Shown in pieces: positions 57,934 through 64,000 of a stretch of DNA of 64,000 nt. The translations under genes and the position numbers were made by a program. Numbering within the stretch: position 1 is the stretch's first letter; the number at the start of each line of letters is the position of its first letter. The stretch spans positions 124,001 through 188,000 of the IMG/VR virus record IMGVR_UViG_3300020474_000001. One strand, written 5' to 3'. The notes beneath the pieces were generated by a model. The model ran no database searches, was not told the origin of the DNA, and was given only the letters and a program-made list of their open reading frames with translations.

Positions 57934-58074
57934 TTAACCTTTCCCTTGTCCTCGATAACGCTTTCGAGCTTTGTTACGTGAACTGGCAGCATACTTTGTA
58001 TGTTTCCCAGCACCTTGTCTTGTGTTCTTGGGAGTTGGTACAATTAAATCGCCAGTCTTACTTCGCATTGCCAT
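57934..58074 (-). CDS. 46-aa highly basic hypothetical protein (not in ORF track)
   Basis: Manual translation MAMRSKTGDLIVPTPKNTRQGAGKHTKYAASSRNKARKRYRGQGKG with GAGG RBS. Confidence 0.7.
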   Translation of the reverse strand: MAMRSKTGDLIVPTPKNTRQGAGKHTKYAASSRNKARKRYRGQGKG

Positions 58075-58085
58075 AATTCTTTACC

Positions 58086-58865
58086 TCAAATAATACGAGT
58101 CTTTTCATGTCCGACACGAATGCGTGGATCACAGAGAATACTAAAACCAGCTTTCTTTGCATCTAAACAAAAACTGACATCCTCGCCACACATGTCCTGC
58201 ACTTCACCACTCTCAAATACTTGCATCTTAGGTGCAAACCATGGATATGGTAATCCCTTATCCTCAAATACTCCCTTCCGAATTAACATCCACCCAAATC
58301 CTGCATAATCTACAGTGAATGGTTCGGTACGACCACTTAGACTTGTTAATGTCTCGTGATTCATTACCCCACCGTTATCCTTGAATCCATTCTCATCCAT
58401 CCAATGTGCAACACTCGATGACTTGCCATCTTCTGTACAATACCATCCAGTCGTAATTGCATTCTTCTTTCCTTCCTCAGGTTCTGCTAATGCACATAAC
58501 TGCCAGAATTTCTCCGTGTTGAATACAATATCACTATCAATCCATAATTGATAATCATACTCTAACTTACCGTCCCATGGCTCTTGGTCGGGTCCCCTCA
58601 ATACATTGGCACCCAAACATTTGCAACGGGCGAAATTTACCATTGAACTGTAATCTTGACTAATCTGTATAGCCATTCCATTCTGTACTAAGTCAAAACA
58701 TAATTGCACAAAATTTTTGAGAAATGTATACGATACTCCCCTGCCTGGAAGGCAAAATACAATCGTCTTCCCTCTCATACTCTCTTTGATACTCTCGTAA
58801 TCCCACTCAGGCTCTGATACACTCACAGCAGCGGCATCCTCCTTGATACTGAATCCTTTAGACAT
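58086..58865 (-). CDS. GT-A fold glycosyltransferase-like protein
   Basis: DxD motif WIDSDIVF, AGFGWMLI, CGEDVSFC, RVGHEK. Confidence 0.7.
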   Translation of the reverse strand: MSKGFSIKEDAAAVSVSEPEWDYESIKESMRGKTIVFCLPGRGVSYTFLKNFVQLCFDLVQNGMAIQISQDYSSMVNFARCKCLGANVLRGPDQEPWDGKLEYDYQLWIDSDIVFNTEKFWQLCALAEPEEGKKNAITTGWYCTEDGKSSSVAHWMDENGFKDNGGVMNHETLTSLSGRTEPFTVDYAGFGWMLIRKGVFEDKGLPYPWFAPKMQVFESGEVQDMCGEDVSFCLDAKKAGFSILCDPRIRVGHEKTRII

Positions 58866-58888
58866 AATCTTTCAATGACTACTCCGTA

Positions 58889-58917
58889 ATTATAACAAAT
58901 TTATATATACCTGTCAA
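58889..58917 (-). promoter_or_regulatory. Consensus sigma70 promoter
   Basis: TTGACA-17nt-TATAAT on the minus strand upstream of the GT-like gene. Confidence 0.85.
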
Positions 58918-59111
58918 TATTGTTACCCTTGACCACCCTTTTATATCCCACGGATTTTTTTCTGAAACCTTATACAAAAACCCTTTTTGGGTGGCAAAAA
59001 TTTTTGGCGTTTTTTTATATACATCGCGTTTTGTCACCTCTGTAGGTTAGGGATGTTTGCTTTTTTTAATACGCGCAAATATAAACAATTAACAATAAAT
59101 CGTAATTACTG

Positions 59112-59239
59112 TGTATTACTAATAGATAGTGATTTGCTATGTATTACTAATAGATAGTGATTTGTTATTTGATAATTAGCAGATTACTATTTGATAATTA
59201 AGCGATTGCTATGTAATAAGAATAGATAGCAATCGCTTA
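59112..59239. repeat. AT-rich direct repeats and a perfect inverted repeat
   Basis: 25-bp TGTATTACTAATAGATAGTGATTTG at 59112 and 59140; TATTTGATAATTA twice; 14-bp IR 59199-59212 / 59226-59239. Confidence 0.9.
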
Positions 59240-59267
59240 TATATTACTATATTGTGGATAGTCAATA

Positions 59268-59510
59268 TTAATAGTCTGCCCATTCTGCTAGCATTTCATT
59301 CAATCGCGCAACGTCCAAATCAGCATGCTTCCAATACACACCATCAGGAGTAACTGCACCGTAAAGTTCAACTAATTGGTGCGAGAGTGACTTATAACCG
59401 TGCTCCGCAAACATACGAGCAAGGTTATACATTCCCTCATCATTACCCAACCAGAGAGCAACATTCCAGGTTTCGTAGTTTGCCCAACCGTTGCAAGTTT
59501 GAGTGCTCAT
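59268..59510 (-). CDS. Putative early hypothetical protein (NGWANYETW motif)
   Basis: CNGWANYETWNVALWLGNDEGMY...TPDGV motif typical of small phage early proteins. Confidence 0.8.
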   Translation of the reverse strand: MSTQTCNGWANYETWNVALWLGNDEGMYNLARMFAEHGYKSLSHQLVELYGAVTPDGVYWKHADLDVARLNEMLAEWADY

Positions 59511-59547
59511 AATTCAGGGGGAAGATGTAAAGAATGGGGAGCGTTGC

Positions 59548-59739
59548 CTAGTCAAGGAGAACAGCAGCGTGATCGTTAGCGAAGCGGCGAGCGTTACAGG
59601 CAGCGATCTGCCATGCGGGACGCCCTGCTGAGGGTTCAGGGAACGCTGCGGAAATGGCAGCATCGACGCCCTGGTGGATGGAGCGTTCAACCCATACGTG
59701 GGAACGATCAGAGAGGGAGCAAGCGGGAGAGAAGGGCAT
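59548..59739 (-). CDS. Small GC-rich putative early hypothetical protein
   Basis: ORF track; same strand and spacing as neighbours; pyrimidine-rich leader. Confidence 0.45.
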   Translation of the reverse strand: MPFSPACSLSDRSHVWVERSIHQGVDAAISAAFPEPSAGRPAWQIAACNARRFANDHAAVLLD

Positions 59740-59797
59740 TGGAAGAACGGGGGGAGAGATACATGGGGGCGACGATGCCCCCGCTGTGTTGTGGTGC

Positions 59798-60016
59798 TTA
59801 GGGGAACATCAAGTCGGTAAAGCGCTCGGAGTGCCATGCCCGCAACTCGCCTAGGTCGATTCGCTCGCCCATCAGGCGTCCGTAGTCGATGGCGAACTGC
59901 TGTAGAAGGCAAAGTTCAGGATTAACAGGGTCCCAGACATAGCGAACTGCCTCTGGAAAGGAGATGGTGCCATTGGCATCAGCGGTGGGCATTGGTTTCG
60001 TTTGAACTAAACCCAT
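59798..60016 (-). CDS. Small putative early hypothetical protein
   Basis: Preceded by the palindrome/leader cassette at 60017-60070. Confidence 0.55.
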   Translation of the reverse strand: MGLVQTKPMPTADANGTISFPEAVRYVWDPVNPELCLLQQFAIDYGRLMGERIDLGELRAWHSERFTDLMFP

Positions 60017-60132
60017 AATCGCCGAGATCTCAGGAGAAATCTATAGGCACTGTGCCAGTTTGCCAACTGGTTTTGACTGGTTTTGAAATGTTAAGAGTTG
60101 TGAAATATTCGCGATTCTGCCTCTCGGTGCGC

Positions 60133-60218
60133 TACACTATGGGAGACAACCAAAGGAGGGGTGAGGTAGCCCTGATGACGCCAACGGTCGCCACTCCCCC
60201 TGCAATCAATTAAGTATA
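60133..60218 (+). other. Repeated element copy 1 between convergent -10 boxes; contains 12-codon ORF 60175-60213 (MTPTVATPPAIN)
   Basis: TACACT(+) ... GAGGTAGCCCTGATGACG...CGCCACTCCCCCTGC ... TATACT(-). Confidence 0.7.
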
Positions 60219-60270
60219 TCATTTTGTTACAAAATCCCTGTCAATGGGTTGTGTGCCACTATGGCGGGTG

Positions 60271-61011
60271 TCACACCCCGGCATGCTGTTGCTTATATGG
60301 TTTCAAAAATGCGGCGTTAAGTTTTACTTTAGCGTTAAGATTCGACTCCTTTGACTGACCGCCGTGCAGCAACAGTGCAAAGGGACCATCCATGAAACAG
60401 CGTTCTTCGTGGCGGTACTCGACACCGTCAATTGGCAGATTCAGTTCTGCCGCTTCTGCAATATCCTGCACGACCTTTACATAGCGAGGGAACCTGCCAG
60501 CATCAATTAATGCATCATATCTGCCGCCATAAGATGCTGTCATATAGAAATTATCAGGCAAAATAACACTGCGGAACAAGTGCAACGACTTAGAGTAGCA
60601 ATAGAATTTAAGACCTGGCATTCTCTTGGCGACCTTAATCCATGCTTTTAAATACTCAATATTGAAAAAATCACCAGACTCATGTATACGAATGCGAGTA
60701 TACTTACGGCGGCGCTTCTTTAACTCTACCTGAATCGATTGATAGATTAACTCCTCAATATTGTCACTAGCATTAATTAAATCAAAATTATGCTTTCGTG
60801 CATCATAAACTGCAGGATATTGTGCTTCAGCACGGGCAGCGAAACAAGTGAATTCAGTGTTATCACCACGCACTAGATTGCGCTTGCCGCTGTTAACAAC
60901 TGCCCATGCCCTACACTTATCAGCACCGGGACAGGTTCTACCCGCAGGCAGGTTGAAAATCAAGGTGTCGGGGTGCAGTTTAGCGTTGCCAGCGGAGAAC
61001 TTAAGAAGCAT
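60271..61011 (-). CDS. GP88-like (radical-SAM-related, Cys-containing) phage protein
   Basis: FSAGNAKL, FNLPAGRTCPGADKC...CFAA, RIRIHESGDFF, FYCYSKS; start MLLK at 61011. Confidence 0.75.
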   Translation of the reverse strand: MLLKFSAGNAKLHPDTLIFNLPAGRTCPGADKCRAWAVVNSGKRNLVRGDNTEFTCFAARAEAQYPAVYDARKHNFDLINASDNIEELIYQSIQVELKKRRRKYTRIRIHESGDFFNIEYLKAWIKVAKRMPGLKFYCYSKSLHLFRSVILPDNFYMTASYGGRYDALIDAGRFPRYVKVVQDIAEAAELNLPIDGVEYRHEERCFMDGPFALLLHGGQSKESNLNAKVKLNAAFLKPYKQQHAGV

Positions 61012-61150
61012 GGATCTGAGGTCGATTGATACCAGTATTGCCGGGATTCGCATGCATGCTGGGGTCATTGTGCCACTATGCCAACTGGTTTGAAACGTTA
61101 CAAGATGTTAAAGGTTCGTGAATCTGCCGCACTTCCCCCATCCGATACGC

Positions 61151-61235
61151 TATGATGTGGGAACAACAGAAGGAGGGGCAGGGCAGCCCTGATGACGAAA
61201 AAAGGCGACACTCACCCTGCAACGAAATAATCATA
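61151..61235 (+). other. Repeated element copy 2; contains 12-codon ORF 61192-61230 (MTKKGDTHPATK)
   Basis: TATGAT(+) ... GGGCAGCCCTGATGACG...CGACACTCACCCTGC ... TATGAT(-). Confidence 0.7.
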
Positions 61236-61291
61236 AGATATGTGACACTTTATGAACTGTCACAGTGCCACTTTTATATGTGGTTTTATTA

Positions 61292-61358
61292 CATAATTGT
61301 ATTTTATGGCAGGGTAAGTGGCGATCGTTGTCGTCTTCGGTGCTACCTCACACCTCAA
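61292..61358 (-). other. Repeated element copy 4 (inverted; AAG in place of ATG, no in-register stop)
   Basis: Minus strand reads GAGGTGTGAGGTAGCACCGAAGACGACAACGATCGCCACTTACCCTGCCATAAAA. Confidence 0.65.
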
Positions 61359-61489
61359 TAAATTGTAACAATCAGAGCATAATGGTGTTTCCCAACTGAT
61401 CGTATCTTAGCACAGCAGGAGCAGATCCGTGACCCACTCCGTAACATAATGAAATATTATCACTTTGCCAGCATAGAGTTTGAGTGATA

Positions 61490-61714
61490 TTATTCTTCCT
61501 CCTCCTCTACTTTTACGACCTTGAGTTTACCTGCGGCAATAAGATCCAACAGCATACCAGTCGATCCCTTCAAAATACCGTCTCCGTCAATACGCAGACA
61601 CTGAAATTCTTTGGCAATGTCATCTACAATGTCCGGCGTTATTTCCCCACAACGGATGGCATATACTCGTCTTGTATGCTCGTCGTTGATGTCAAGACCC
61701 AAATAGTTTCTCAT
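61490..61714 (-). CDS. Putative early hypothetical protein
   Basis: ORF track; plausible composition; acidic tail. Confidence 0.6.
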   Translation of the reverse strand: MRNYLGLDINDEHTRRVYAIRCGEITPDIVDDIAKEFQCLRIDGDGILKGSTGMLLDLIAAGKLKVVKVEEEEE

Positions 61715-61765
61715 GATGATGAAGATGAAGATGATGTTAGCGAAGGTGATGATTGTGAAGGTGAT

Positions 61766-62002
61766 TCAATACTGTGGATCAATGAACATAACAGTGCAGG
61801 ATCCACGCGGACGAAGAATAATGGTTTCGCCACATTCTTCTCGGTCACATTTCACTCCAGATAATCCTATTGCTTCCTTACATGCTAGGACAATCTGTCG
61901 ATCAGTGGCACAATCTGAGAGACTAATTGTCTCCCGATCACACCAACTGTAGTTTGCTTCACCACCGAATGTGTCAGTGTACTCAACCTTAAAGTTCTGC
62001 AT
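61766..62002 (-). CDS. Putative early hypothetical protein (YTDTFGGEANYSW motif)
   Basis: VEYTDTFGGEANYSWC...AIGLSGVKC...LRPRGSCTVMFI. Confidence 0.8.
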   Translation of the reverse strand: MQNFKVEYTDTFGGEANYSWCDRETISLSDCATDRQIVLACKEAIGLSGVKCDREECGETIILRPRGSCTVMFIDPQY

Positions 62003-62040
62003 GATTCAAAAAAAGAATAAAGTTTGCGGGTAAAATCTTA

Positions 62041-62304
62041 TCAGGTGTGAGTGCTACCATCAGGTAACATGCAACCGTGAAGACCACAATTTGGCAAAAT
62101 ACCTTCGATGATGACACTGTAGGTGCCATTATGATGGTTTCCTTGCACATCTTCCTCCACCATTAACCCCTGCATAAGTTCAACAACACTCTTGCCTGTT
62201 TGTATGCTCCACATAGAAAACTTTGCGAGTTGCTGATAAGTCAGAACCTGGAAGTGATCACCCAGGGTTCCATCAGATTCGAGAAGTGGTGCTCTGTAAC
62301 GCAT
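62041..62304 (-). CDS. Putative early hypothetical protein
   Basis: ORF track; preceded by palindromic sites at 62340-62385. Confidence 0.65.
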   Translation of the reverse strand: MRYRAPLLESDGTLGDHFQVLTYQQLAKFSMWSIQTGKSVVELMQGLMVEEDVQGNHHNGTYSVIIEGILPNCGLHGCMLPDGSTHT

Positions 62305-62393
62305 TTGGTTGGTTGCGATTGATATAAGTATGGGTCAGAGTGGACAACTTATCAACCTCAGAGTGACAGTTTGCCAAGTGTCCACTAATGTTA

Positions 62394-62759
62394 TCAAGCG
62401 ATTGCCCTTTCTATCATTTTAATAATAAGTTCACTTGGCGCTACAATATCATTAACTACGCTTTCTTCCCCCGTTGCTTCTAAGGGAACACAAGTTAAGT
62501 GCATCTTCCAATCATATTTTCTATTGTTGAAGAACAACATAGAATAATCTACAGCATCGACAATATCAGCACCGATAACAGCAAGGGATTTTGTATTCTT
62601 TTCTTTGCTAACTTTCCATTCTTTGACAGGTTCCATACCTTCGCCGTCGAGAACATCAAACGCAACAAGATTCCAACCTGCATCATCAAGTTTGCGAATA
62701 ATCTTCCGGGCGTTGCTGCATGTCTTGGAGATTGCCATGGGGTTGATGTAACTGAACAT
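62394..62759 (-). CDS. Putative early hypothetical protein
   Basis: ORF track; preceded by the leader cassette and a palindrome at 62762-62819. Confidence 0.65.
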   Translation of the reverse strand: MFSYINPMAISKTCSNARKIIRKLDDAGWNLVAFDVLDGEGMEPVKEWKVSKEKNTKSLAVIGADIVDAVDYSMLFFNNRKYDWKMHLTCVPLEATGEESVVNDIVAPSELIIKMIERAIA

Positions 62760-62848
62760 ATAATCATCGAGATCTCAGGACCAATCAATACCAGCTGTGA
62801 CAGTTCACCAAGTGTCCACCGATGCCCTCAGAGGCACCTAGGAGGCGC

Positions 62849-62932
62849 TATAATATAAACAAATCAGAAGAGAGGTGGGGTAACCTCGATGACAACAAAT
62901 ATCGACACTACTCCTGCCATAAAATAATTATA
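62849..62932 (+). other. Repeated element copy 3; contains 12-codon ORF 62889-62927 (MTTNIDTTPAIK)
   Basis: TATAAT(+) ... GGGGTAACCTCGATGACA...CGACACTACTCCTGCC ... TATAAT(-). Confidence 0.7.
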
Positions 62933-62947
62933 TCAAAATGTAACAAT

Positions 62948-63136
62948 GTGCCAGTTTGCCAAGTGTCACAGTGCCAGTTCATAAACTGTCCACTCGGTCC
63001 TACTGCCTCCCTCCCGTGCTCCACCCTTCCACTGTAGGGGCTGCTGCCCGCTGCTGCTGTATAAACCACTACGATTTTATAAATTGTCACAAAGACACAT
63101 AAAGCACTGGCACTGGACAGTTCTCGAAGTGTCCAC
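62948..63136. promoter_or_regulatory. Cluster of palindromic operator-like sites
   Basis: GTGCCAGTT-tgcc-AAGTGTCAC (62948), GTGCCAGTT-cata-AACTGTCCAC (62971), TGGACAGTT-ctcg-AAGTGTCCAC (63114). Confidence 0.75.
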
Positions 63137-63179
63137 TGTGTGAAAATCGCGACCTTATGAATTTTTATGGCGGGGGTGC

Positions 63180-63208
63180 TTGACAAAACGGCGATCGTGT
63201 GATAACAT
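63180..63208 (+). promoter_or_regulatory. Sigma70-type promoter with no obvious downstream ORF
   Basis: TTGACA-17nt-TAACAT. Confidence 0.6.
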
Positions 63209-63240
63209 GCTGCCCAAGATCACAAGGTCTCAGAGGGTTT

Positions 63241-63280
63241 CATAAGACTTTACATAAGACTTTACATAAGACTTTACATA
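63241..63280. repeat. 12-bp tandem repeat CATAAGACTTTA x3 plus a partial unit
   Basis: Units at 63241, 63253, 63265, partial at 63277. Confidence 0.95.
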
Positions 63281-63720
63281 ACAATTCAAAATATAAACAC
63301 TACTTATATTAGATATAAGAAAAACAAATACATCATCCCTTAGCAGACAAATACATACATGTCAAGAGATAAGTTACAAAATTTAAGATAATTTTTGTTA
63401 CATATTATTTTCCACAATTCCACAGAGTTATTCCACAAGATGATGATTATGAAGATGATGATGATAATGAAGATGATATGTATGCCCGTGAAGATGATAC
63501 TCTAGATGCTTCGTAGATACTCTGTAGCACCTTCCTAGACACTACTGAGTGCATTTGAATAAAAAACGAAAGTATATTTATTTAACCATTTTTTATATGT
63601 TTTTGCACTATTTTGTAGGTAATAATGCTCAAATATATGACTGAAGATGACATTTAGTCTTTTCTCCATCACGGGACTGTCATAAATGCCCTGGTGGTCA
63701 TGCTGCTGCTGAAGATGACA

Positions 63721-63749
63721 TAAAAAAAGGAGAGTATTAACTACTCTCC
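63721..63749 (-). terminator. Intrinsic terminator after the His-rich gene
   Basis: GGAGAGTA-N5-TACTCTCC perfect stem plus T-run on the minus strand. Confidence 0.85.
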
Positions 63750-63767
63750 ATATATTATGCTTAATCA

Positions 63768-63998
63768 TCAATGAAAGTGAGTTTTTATTGTATAGTGATA
63801 AGATCTAATACCATGATGTTTGTGACCATCTCCGTGCTTATGTTTGTGCTTATGAGTAATACCTGATTTGAAATGAGTATGCCAATGATTGTGCTTAATT
63901 ACATGAACATGATAATGTTTATGATGTCCATGTCCATGATGTTTAGTATGAGCAAATGCTGGGGCAGTTGTAATCAGCAGACCAGCAGTGAGAAAGAG
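63768..63998 (-). CDS. Secreted histidine-rich peptide (5' end outside window)
   Basis: Manual translation ...LFLTAGLLITTAPAFA|HTKHHGHGHHKHYHVHVIKHNHWHTHFKSGITHKHKHKHGDGHKHHGIRSYHYTIKTHFH*; AxA signal-peptidase site. Confidence 0.8.
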   Translation of the reverse strand, partial: LFLTAGLLITTAPAFAHTKHHGHGHHKHYHVHVIKHNHWHTHFKSGITHKHKHKHGDGHKHHGIRSYHYTIKTHFH

Positions 63999-64000
63999 AA

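What the first reader, a model, noticed from the sequence alone, without database searches (positions are those of the whole stretch)
63768..63998. Secreted, extremely histidine-rich phage peptide
Seen in sequence: an unlisted minus-strand ORF with a hydrophobic signal peptide ending APAFA. The 60-aa mature peptide has 23 His (38%), mostly in HxH patterns, and no Cys. It is followed by a strong terminator. Established: His-rich peptides such as Hpn and HRP-type proteins bind Ni, Zn, Cu or haem. Inference: a putative early-region product exported to the periplasm or lumen to scavenge or buffer trace metals, or to alter the cell surface, in a metal-limited marine host.
Basis: partly seen in the sequence, partly recalled or inferred. 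Interest (0 to 1): 0.7.

Follow-up and report, generated by a model that had tools for sequence, protein, structure and literature searches.

The report
Exported histidine-ladder mini-protein of marine cyanophages
A virus of marine Synechococcus encodes a small exported protein with nine invariant histidines, one of an unnamed family seen so far only in T4-like cyanophages, and it most likely binds trace metals in the envelope of the infected cell.

Summary
The minus-strand ORF is a complete 80-codon gene: ATG 10 bases beyond the window end, stop at 63768-63770. It has a Sec-type signal peptide (MKSFLFLTAGLLITTAPAFA). The mature part is 60 aa with 23 His, 9 Lys and no Cys. A strong intrinsic terminator follows at 63722-63749.

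The gene is not an orphan. At least 61 distinct relatives exist, all metagenomic and unnamed. Every relative whose context I read lies on a T4-like cyanophage contig, mostly between clamp-loader genes gp44 and gp62. No Pfam, NCBIfam, PHROG or PDB family matches. No member was found in 401 host-order genomes, nor by DNA search in deposited phage genomes.

The family core is a beta-hairpin, H-x-H-x-H-x-H, turn, H-x-H-x-H-x-H, plus a GHHG loop. The hairpin is stapled by a cross-strand Cys pair in 52 of 61 members. In the window's clade, W/K or similar pairs replace both Cys. AlphaFold predicts the same hairpin.

Shown: a real, conserved gene, an export signal, and the inferred hairpin ladder. Inferred: the protein binds divalent transition metals in the periplasm or thylakoid lumen. 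Which metal, the oligomeric state, the physiological role and the "early" timing are untested.

The parts
63771..64000 (-). Coding sequence of the 80-aa His-rich pre-protein. This is the in-window part, codons 4 (last two bases) to 80. The ATG lies at window-equivalent 64010 (G000 188010), 10 bases beyond the window end.
   Evidence: homologues; dN/dS
63768..63770 (-). TGA stop codon, followed at once by a second in-frame TGA and a TAA
63951..64000 (-). Signal peptide, residues 1-20 (MKSFLFLTAGLLITTAPAFA; in-window part). The predicted SPase I cut is after A-F-A, which leaves His as the first mature residue.
   Evidence: Sequence rules: K2, a hydrophobic core, P at -4 and A at -3/-1. These are conserved in 59 of 61 family members. 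SignalP was not available.
63771..63950 (-). Mature 60-aa peptide: 23 His, 9 Lys, 0 Cys, net K+R-D-E = +9
63834..63899 (-). Beta-hairpin core, residues 38-59 (IKHNHWHTH-FKSG-ITHKHKHKH). His 40, 42, 44 and 46 on strand 1 and His 53, 55, 57 and 59 on strand 2 lie on one face. W43 and K54 occupy the position of the family's Cys-Cys staple on the other face.
   Evidence: AlphaFold2 predicts strands 38-46 and 51-59 with pLDDT 74-82.
63810..63818 (-). H65-H66-G67 of the conserved G-x-G-H-H-G loop
   Evidence: H66 in 61/61, H65 in 59/61, G67 in 58/61
63722..63749 (-). Intrinsic terminator: 8-bp stem GGAGAGTA/TACTCTCC, loop GTTAA, then T7

Best explanation
The gene encodes a small pre-protein. The Sec pathway exports it and signal peptidase I cuts it, which releases a 60-residue, strongly basic peptide that starts with His. 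Its conserved core is a two-stranded beta-hairpin. Alternate residues on both strands are histidines (40, 42, 44, 46 and 53, 55, 57, 59), so one face of the hairpin is a 2 x 4 histidine ladder. A nearby G-x-G-H-H-G loop adds two more invariant His. The opposite face is polar and variable, and in most relatives it is pinned by a cross-strand disulfide. In the window's clade a W/K pair replaces that disulfide. The most likely activity is reversible binding of several divalent transition-metal ions (Zn, Ni, Cu or Co) by the imidazole ladder, in the periplasm or thylakoid lumen of the infected marine Synechococcus. There it would capture, buffer or hand over metal for the benefit of the phage. Binding may depend on self-association, which would complete the coordination spheres. 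Shown: the gene, its conservation, its export signal, its restriction to phages so far, and the hairpin register. Inferred: metal binding. Speculative: which metal, the compartment, the stoichiometry and the physiological pay-off.
For: The ORF is complete with a start, and a terminator follows. Purifying selection acts on this frame. The profile searches returned 50 family members at 90% clustering and 12 representatives at 50% clustering, and 61 distinct sequences were aligned here. All are 78-155 aa with the same signal peptide. His 40, 44, 46, 55, 57 and 66 are invariant in 61/61, and His 42, 53 and 65 in 59-60/61, whereas the interleaved positions vary. Pair 43/54 is C/C in 52 members and non-Cys/non-Cys in 9, never single. 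In P0009 the Cys pair has moved to 45/52, which keeps the register i+j=97. AlphaFold2 independently predicts strands 38-46 and 51-59 with a 47-50 turn. The first mature residue is His in 42/61 members. From general knowledge, a free N-terminal His is a known Cu(II) ligand arrangement, as in CopC and LPMOs. HxH motifs on beta-strands of phage fibre proteins coordinate Fe or Zn (PMC11705849, read). Periplasmic zinc chaperones use His-rich loops (PA4063, PMC8561739, abstract listed; weak compositional PDB hit). The phage also encodes exported or metal-dependent proteins such as plastocyanin.
Against: There is no experimental or computational measure of metal binding, because the complex job was not folded. 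No metal-transport or metalloenzyme gene is a conserved neighbour. The usual neighbours are the clamp loader, Dam and regA. No cellular homologue ties the family to a metal regulon. Outside the hairpin the AlphaFold model has low confidence, with a mean pLDDT of 61. No RNA contig covers the gene. The high positive charge would equally suit binding of polyanions or membranes.
Confidence: 0.5

Rival explanations
1. The protein is a periplasmic superinfection-exclusion or envelope-protection factor. It would be made during infection and act on an incoming phage's spike or fibre, or on a host envelope protein, as the small exported T4 proteins Sp and Imm do. The histidines would then serve structure or recognition, or strip metal from the HxH sites of a rival phage's tail.
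For: The protein is small and exported, is encoded by a T4-like phage, has no conserved partner gene, and usually sits in the replication module, so it is probably made well before lysis. In T4, Sp is likewise a roughly 100-aa protein with a signal peptide (own knowledge). Tail fibres and spikes of T4-like and marine phages carry HxH metal sites (PMC11705849).
Against: There is no similarity to Sp or Imm, or to any PHROG. There is no local similarity to this phage's own structural proteins. Nothing links the family to receptor or lysozyme inhibition.
Confidence: 0.15
2. The protein is a metal-zipped oligomer. Three hairpins (or two) would pack with their His faces inward around a line of metal ions, like the HxH iron needle of T4 gp37 or the Zn site of gp12. 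This would give a rigid secreted mini-fibre whose role is structural or adhesive rather than metal supply.
For: HxHxHxH lies on both strands of a predicted hairpin, the His face is invariant and the outer face is polar and variable. That is the pattern expected if the His face is buried. HxH-metal cores are a recurrent phage motif. The conserved C-terminal amphipathic strand (for example QIYLDF, LQFQF, QIIIR) could mediate assembly.
Against: The oligomeric state could not be tested. Known HxH needles are parts of long virion proteins assembled in the cytoplasm, not 60-aa exported peptides. Foldseek found nothing.
Confidence: 0.12
3. The protein is a cationic, His-rich peptide that acts on membranes or polyanions, as histatins do. 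It would bind LPS, peptidoglycan-associated polymers or the outer membrane, and alter the cell surface or help lysis.
For: The net charge is +9 in the window protein, and the family median is +5. The protein is exported. The C-terminal strand alternates hydrophobic residues and ends in F, H or R, which loosely resembles outer-membrane-protein C-termini.
Against: Invariance of nine specific His in a fixed register argues for a defined site rather than bulk charge. The gene is not located near lysis genes in any context read. Some members have a net charge as low as -3.
Confidence: 0.1
4. The protein is a thylakoid-lumen factor. The signal peptide would send it to the lumen, where it delivers Cu to phage or host plastocyanin, or buffers protons near pH 6.
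For: Cyanobacterial Sec signals serve both compartments (own knowledge). The phage encodes plastocyanin and psbA. His is the first mature residue in 42/61 members.
Against: There is no linkage to petE in any locus. In G000, petE lies about 94 kb away. Many cyanophages with petE lack this family, since it was not found in deposited genomes. Proton buffering would need very high copy numbers.
Confidence: 0.08

Closest known systems
HxH metal sites of phage fibre and spike proteins (T4 gp37 needle with seven Fe; gp12 Zn; the 'Ferrojan horse' motifs of marine phage tails)
   Same: Both are phage-encoded, with His-x-His repeats on beta-strands and the imidazoles on one face. Both belong to a marine, trace-metal setting (PMC11705849).
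   Different: The known sites lie in long trimeric virion proteins assembled in the cytoplasm. This protein is an 80-aa pre-protein with a cleavable signal peptide, it has no sequence similarity to this phage's structural proteins, and its oligomeric state is unknown.
Periplasmic His-rich zinc chaperones (ZinT, PA4063/DUF2796, ZrgA)
   Same: They are exported proteins of Gram-negative cells that use His-rich segments to bind Zn with micromolar affinity and pass it on (PMC8561739).
   Different: They are larger folded domains of 150-220 aa with disordered His loops, they are Zur-regulated, and they sit next to transporters. The only match here is E 0.023, confined to a His-rich loop. The fold, size and context all differ.
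SmbP of Nitrosomonas europaea and CopH/CopM-type periplasmic His-rich copper binders (own knowledge)
   Same: They are small periplasmic proteins, His-rich and without Cys ligands, that bind several Cu, Ni or Zn ions and are thought to buffer metal.
   Different: They are helical repeat proteins of cellular origin. No sequence match appeared in the PDB profile search at E <= 10. A host CopM-like DUF305 protein matched only through its His run.
Hpn and Hpn-like proteins of Helicobacter, HRP2, histatin-5
   Same: They have a very high His content, bind Ni, Zn, Cu or haem, or act as cationic peptides.
   Different: Hpn is cytoplasmic, has poly-His runs and Cys pairs, and has no signal peptide. 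HRP2 and the histatins are eukaryotic. No homology was found. In this protein the His residues sit in a fixed, structured register.
T4 Sp (spackle) and Imm
   Same: They are small exported proteins of a T4-like phage that act in the envelope during infection (own knowledge).
   Different: There is no sequence or PHROG relation. Sp is helical and is not His-rich.

Membership tests
Sec/SPase I-exported proteins | N-terminal positive residue, a hydrophobic core of 10 or more residues, and small residues at -3 and -1 before the cut | tested here: met
   The window protein has MK-SFLFLTAGLLITT-APAFA|H. Across 61 relatives, K2 is present in at least 90%, P at -4 in 59, and A at -1 in 59. This was judged by sequence rules only. 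SignalP was not available and there is no export assay.
New cyanophage His-ladder family (unnamed; defined here) | Core H-x-H-x-H-x-H, a 4-residue turn ending in G, then (Y/F/I)-x-H-x-H-x-H-x-H and G-x-G-H-H-G, after a signal peptide, in a protein of 78-155 aa | tested here: met
   The window protein scores 88 bits (E 5e-26) against the family profile and has every invariant His.
New cyanophage His-ladder family (unnamed; defined here) | Cross-strand Cys pair at positions 43/54 | tested here: not met
   The window protein has W43/K54. The 8 Cys-less members form one well-supported group (98/87) among Cys-containing ones. This is a clade-specific replacement, not grounds for exclusion.
Phage HxH metal-binding fibre or spike domains (gp37, gp12, gp5-type) | HxH motifs on beta-strands | tested here: met
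   There are 13 HxH motifs and 7 HxHxH motifs, with strands 38-46 and 51-59 predicted.
Phage HxH metal-binding fibre or spike domains (gp37, gp12, gp5-type) | Part of a trimeric virion fibre or spike protein, with each metal bound by His from three chains | tested here: not met
   This is an 80-aa pre-protein with a signal peptide and no similarity to G000 structural ORFs. Trimer formation itself is not testable here, because the complex job was not folded.
ZinT / PA4063 (DUF2796) / ZrgA zinc chaperones | Sequence or profile membership of the folded domain | tested here: not met
   Pfam gave no hit. The PDB profile hit to 7ahw has E 0.023 over 32 residues of a His-rich loop only.
Hpn / Hpn-like nickel storage proteins | Cytoplasmic location, poly-His and Cys-containing repeats, sequence similarity | tested here: not met
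   A signal peptide is present and there is no Cys. There is no hit in Pfam, NCBIfam or PDB.
Pfam BRANT (PF28279, 'putative His-rich protein') | Match to the family HMM | not testable with these tools
   The ESM Atlas listed this family only at rank 56 with score 0.78, below the level at which shuffled sequences also hit. The Pfam copy held here lacks this model.
Any curated family (Pfam-A, NCBIfam, PHROGs v4, PDB) | Hit above the curated cut-off | tested here: not met
   The best hit was DUF2946 at 13.6 bits against a cut-off of 23.7.

The most novel reading that the evidence does not exclude
T4-like cyanophages export a self-assembling, metal-zipped histidine-ladder mini-protein. This would be a soluble, secreted counterpart of the HxH iron needle of their own tail fibres. 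In the periplasm of the infected cell it would act either as a virus-made metallophore, capturing scarce Zn, Ni, Cu or Fe for phage metalloproteins, or as a metal-stripping or decoy factor that blocks superinfection. Either role would be a new class of viral auxiliary function in ocean trace-metal cycling.
Probability: 0.15. Interest if true: 0.85.

Novelty: new variant of a known kind. Interest (0 to 1): 0.6.

Why it matters
Cyanophage auxiliary genes are known for light harvesting, carbon, phosphate and nitrogen, but not for trace metals in the envelope. An exported, virus-specific metal-binding protein would add a molecular handle to the debate on how viruses take part in trace-metal cycling, and this one recurs in Tara Oceans and other marine metagenomes. 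The family also gives structural biology an unusually small, densely packed all-histidine site on a disulfide-stapled hairpin. The Cys-less variant in this window offers a natural experiment on how that staple can be replaced. Even if the role proves to be superinfection exclusion, it would be the first such factor described for cyanomyoviruses.

Tried and rejected
1. tblastn of the window protein, P0011 and P0003 against 50,697 deposited phage genomes gave no match even at E 10. The low-complexity filter almost certainly masks these queries, so I do not count this as absence.
2. blastn in 'distant' mode with the window gene and two relatives, with and without flanks, found only the neighbouring gp62 and Dam genes. 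S-B43 and S-CAM8 carry an unrelated 96-97-aa gene at that spot.
3. A pattern scan of GTDB genome contigs found 31 pattern matches, none confirmed. The alignment A2 was too diverse to use for that scan.
4. A search of 401 genomes of the host's order gave a best hit of 24 bits. The two hits I inspected are a CopM-like DUF305 protein and a 110-aa exported His-rich protein. For the 110-aa protein, hhalign aligns only the signal peptide.
5. Complex prediction with three copies plus four Zn was not folded by the tool, so it is no evidence either way.
6. Foldseek of the AlphaFold model against the PDB gave nothing below E 3, as expected for a model with pLDDT 61.
7. The ESM Atlas feature search gave scores of 0.84 or less, which is within the range of shuffled controls.
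8. Rfam gave no hit in the whole window, and no tRNA was found in 58000-64000.
9. RNA evidence is weak. One 204-nt contig from an RNA-type library covers the upstream 74-aa ORF and none covers this gene.
10. The weak hits to DUF2946, VPA0510, PepSY_2, GRP and others are all far below their cut-offs, and I rejected them.
11. I considered an outer-membrane beta-barrel or spanin and rejected both. The non-His face of the hairpin is polar, there is no lipobox, and there are no lysis neighbours.
12. I considered a decoy of the phage's own fibre and found no similarity.
13. Literature searches found no paper describing such a cyanophage protein.

Full report
**Observation.** The window is bases 124001-188000 of a 207,655-bp virus record that CheckV rates complete. 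Its GC content is 37.3%. On the minus strand, window 63766-63998 translates to LFLTAGLLITTAPAFA followed by a 60-residue His-rich peptide and a stop. Reading the genome past the window end shows that the ORF is complete. The ATG is at window-equivalent 64010, the ORF has 80 codons, and the TGA stop is at 63768-63770. The mature part after A-F-A has 23 His in 60 residues, 9 Lys, no Cys and 13 overlapping HxH motifs. It holds 7 overlapping HxHxH motifs, against at most 2 in any other ORF of the genome. An 8-bp GC-rich stem with a 5-nt loop and a T7 run follows at 63722-63749, with dG -17.4 kcal/mol and z -4.1.

**A real gene.** The ATG lies 5 nt after the TAA of an upstream 74-codon ORF and has no Shine-Dalgarno sequence. 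Relatives carry either GGAG 7-10 nt upstream or an overlapping ATGA with the preceding gene. Two syntenic copies exist: L002 on an IMG/VR contig and L023 on a Tara scaffold. Against the window gene they give dN/dS of 0.24-0.37, their length differences align as whole-codon gaps, and most replacements fall in the C-terminal tail. A 5.7-kb contig from a marine metagenome of another study matches the gene with zero differences. No RNA contig covers the gene, so transcription is not shown.

**The phage and its host.** DNA matches and gene content identify a T4-like cyanomyovirus with gp6, gp44, gp45, gp62, regA, hsp20 and psbA. Its psbA product is 96-97% identical to those of marine Synechococcus strains MIT S1220, MIT S9507 and WH7803. 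The gene closes a run of small minus-strand ORFs, two of which are DUF7717. That run begins after terminator-like sites near G000 191.1-191.6 kb.

**A family, not an orphan.**
- A word-indexed search found four relatives.
- A profile search of 1.84 billion representatives found 12.
- A profile search of 5.8 billion clusters found 50.
- A DNA pattern for the Cys-type core found 13 IMG/VR contigs.

All members are 78-155 aa, all come from metagenomes, and none carries a name. One variant, P0009, is listed in 69 blocks of the collection, including Tara Oceans assemblies.

In 15 of the loci I read, the gene lies in the stretch between gp44 and gp62. There it sits just upstream of gp62 or of a Dam methylase, on contigs that also carry gp45, regA, hsp20, cobS-like, speD and DNA polymerase genes. 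The window clade (window, L002, L023 and probably P0005) sits elsewhere, in a DUF7717-rich block of small ORFs. Three further loci have other contexts: L011, L015 and L020/L021. No neighbour is conserved across these contexts.

**Not found outside uncultured phages.** The evidence is as follows.
- Curated libraries: no hit above any cut-off in Pfam, NCBIfam, PHROGs or PDB sequences.
- Deposited phage genomes: blastn found only the flanking genes, and S-B43 and S-CAM8 hold an unrelated gene at that site. tblastn returned nothing at all, which I attribute to low-complexity masking and do not count.
- Cellular genomes: a pattern scan of GTDB contigs confirmed nothing.
- Host-order genomes: a profile search of 401 genomes gave at most 24 bits. 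The two hits I inspected were a His run in a CopM-like DUF305 protein and the signal peptide of a 110-aa exported protein.

I therefore write 'not found in those searched' rather than 'absent'.

**Architecture.** In an alignment of 61 distinct members, P at -4 and A at -1 of the signal-peptide cut occur in 59. The first mature residue is His in 42 members. In the other 19 it is Ile, which starts a conserved ITWxEFWEPF extension. His 40, 44, 46, 55, 57 and 66 (window numbering) are invariant. His 42, 53 and 65 are present in 59-60 of the 61. G50, G62 and G67 are conserved, and the interleaved positions vary.

Positions 43 and 54 are Cys/Cys in 52 members. They are W/K, Y/I, Y/F or Q/R in the eight Cys-less members, and no member has a single Cys there. 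In P0009 the pair has moved to 45/52, which keeps the same register, i + j = 97. This is the behaviour of a cross-strand disulfide in a beta-hairpin whose turn is residues 47-50.

AlphaFold2 was run with 26 and then 61 sequences. It predicts strands 38-46 and 51-59 at pLDDT 74-82, plus a short C-terminal strand, and the rest is of low confidence. It follows by inference that the eight hairpin His residues share one face, with cross-strand pairs 44/53, 42/55 and 40/57, and that the other face is polar and exposed.

The eight Cys-less sequences form one group with 98/87 support among Cys-containing ones. The window protein is also near the His-rich extreme of the family, at 38% against a median of 27%.

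**Mechanism.** An exported peptide with nine invariant imidazoles in a fixed array and no acidic or thiol ligands is best explained as a multi-site binder of borderline divalent metals. There are precedents for each element.
- HxH on beta-strands binds Fe or Zn in phage fibres (PMC11705849).
- His-rich loops bind Zn in periplasmic chaperones (PMC8561739).
- A free N-terminal His is a Cu(II) ligand (own knowledge).

I therefore favour metal capture, buffering or hand-over in the periplasm or lumen of the infected cell, with confidence about 0.5. Binding itself is more likely than any particular physiological role. The rivals are superinfection exclusion, a metal-zipped oligomer, a cationic envelope-active peptide, and a lumenal copper or proton role. 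The phage does encode plastocyanin.

**Comparison and novelty.** The protein works most like small periplasmic His-rich metal binders and shares the HxH chemistry of phage fibres. It is not a member of any of those families: no sequence relation was detected, and its fold, size and context differ. I rate it a new variant of a known kind, namely exported His-rich metal-binding proteins. It is carried by a previously undescribed family, found so far only in phages, with a distinctive stapled histidine-ladder hairpin. I score interest at 0.6. The family is real, widespread in the sea and unannotated, but its function remains inferred.

Noticed in passing
window 63250-63730: About 480 nt downstream of the terminator have no convincing ORF. 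They hold five copies of TGAAGATGA(T/C) at 63450, 63468, 63489, 63642 and 63710; the whole window has 12 copies against 2.0 expected. A 12-nt tandem TTACATAAGACT x3 lies at 63250-63286. In the syntenic contig L002 a 66-aa ORF lies downstream of the gene instead. Rfam finds nothing.
   Followed up: partly
G000 94660-95337 (-), outside the window: A 225-aa ORF has a signal peptide (MIKYILAGLLFGAAHGMTVPVKA) nearly identical to that of some His-ladder family members, such as L013. This is a second exported phage protein, and it lies close to the phage's plastocyanin gene (G000 93527-93781).
   Followed up: partly
G000 196090-196626 (-), outside the window; also the long contig carrying P0005: A 533-codon open frame matches Pfam VCPO_2nd (vanadium chloroperoxidase-like) at 38 bits. 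A similar 493-aa gene lies 3 kb from the His-ladder gene on P0005's contig. This is an unusual enzyme for a cyanophage.
   Followed up: no
L117 1492-1824 (-), a genome of the host's order: A 110-aa exported protein has an N-terminal His run and a C-terminus, PGFGIQIRF, that resembles the family's C-terminal strand (for example PGSVQLQFRF in P0052). It lacks the hairpin core, and hhalign aligns only the signal peptide.
   Followed up: partly
L001 2020-3498 (window-equivalent 64019-65497) and the syntenic part of L002: The genes upstream in the same operon are two DUF7717 proteins (146 and 112 aa), an 80-aa phrog_6036 protein, and 48- and 74-aa ORFs without any family. L002 carries an extra 96-aa and an extra 64-aa ORF in this block.
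   Followed up: partly
L028 3248-3820: On Tara contigs that carry the P0009 variant, a 190-aa Peptidase_M10 (a zinc metalloprotease) lies between gp44 and the His-ladder gene.
   Followed up: no
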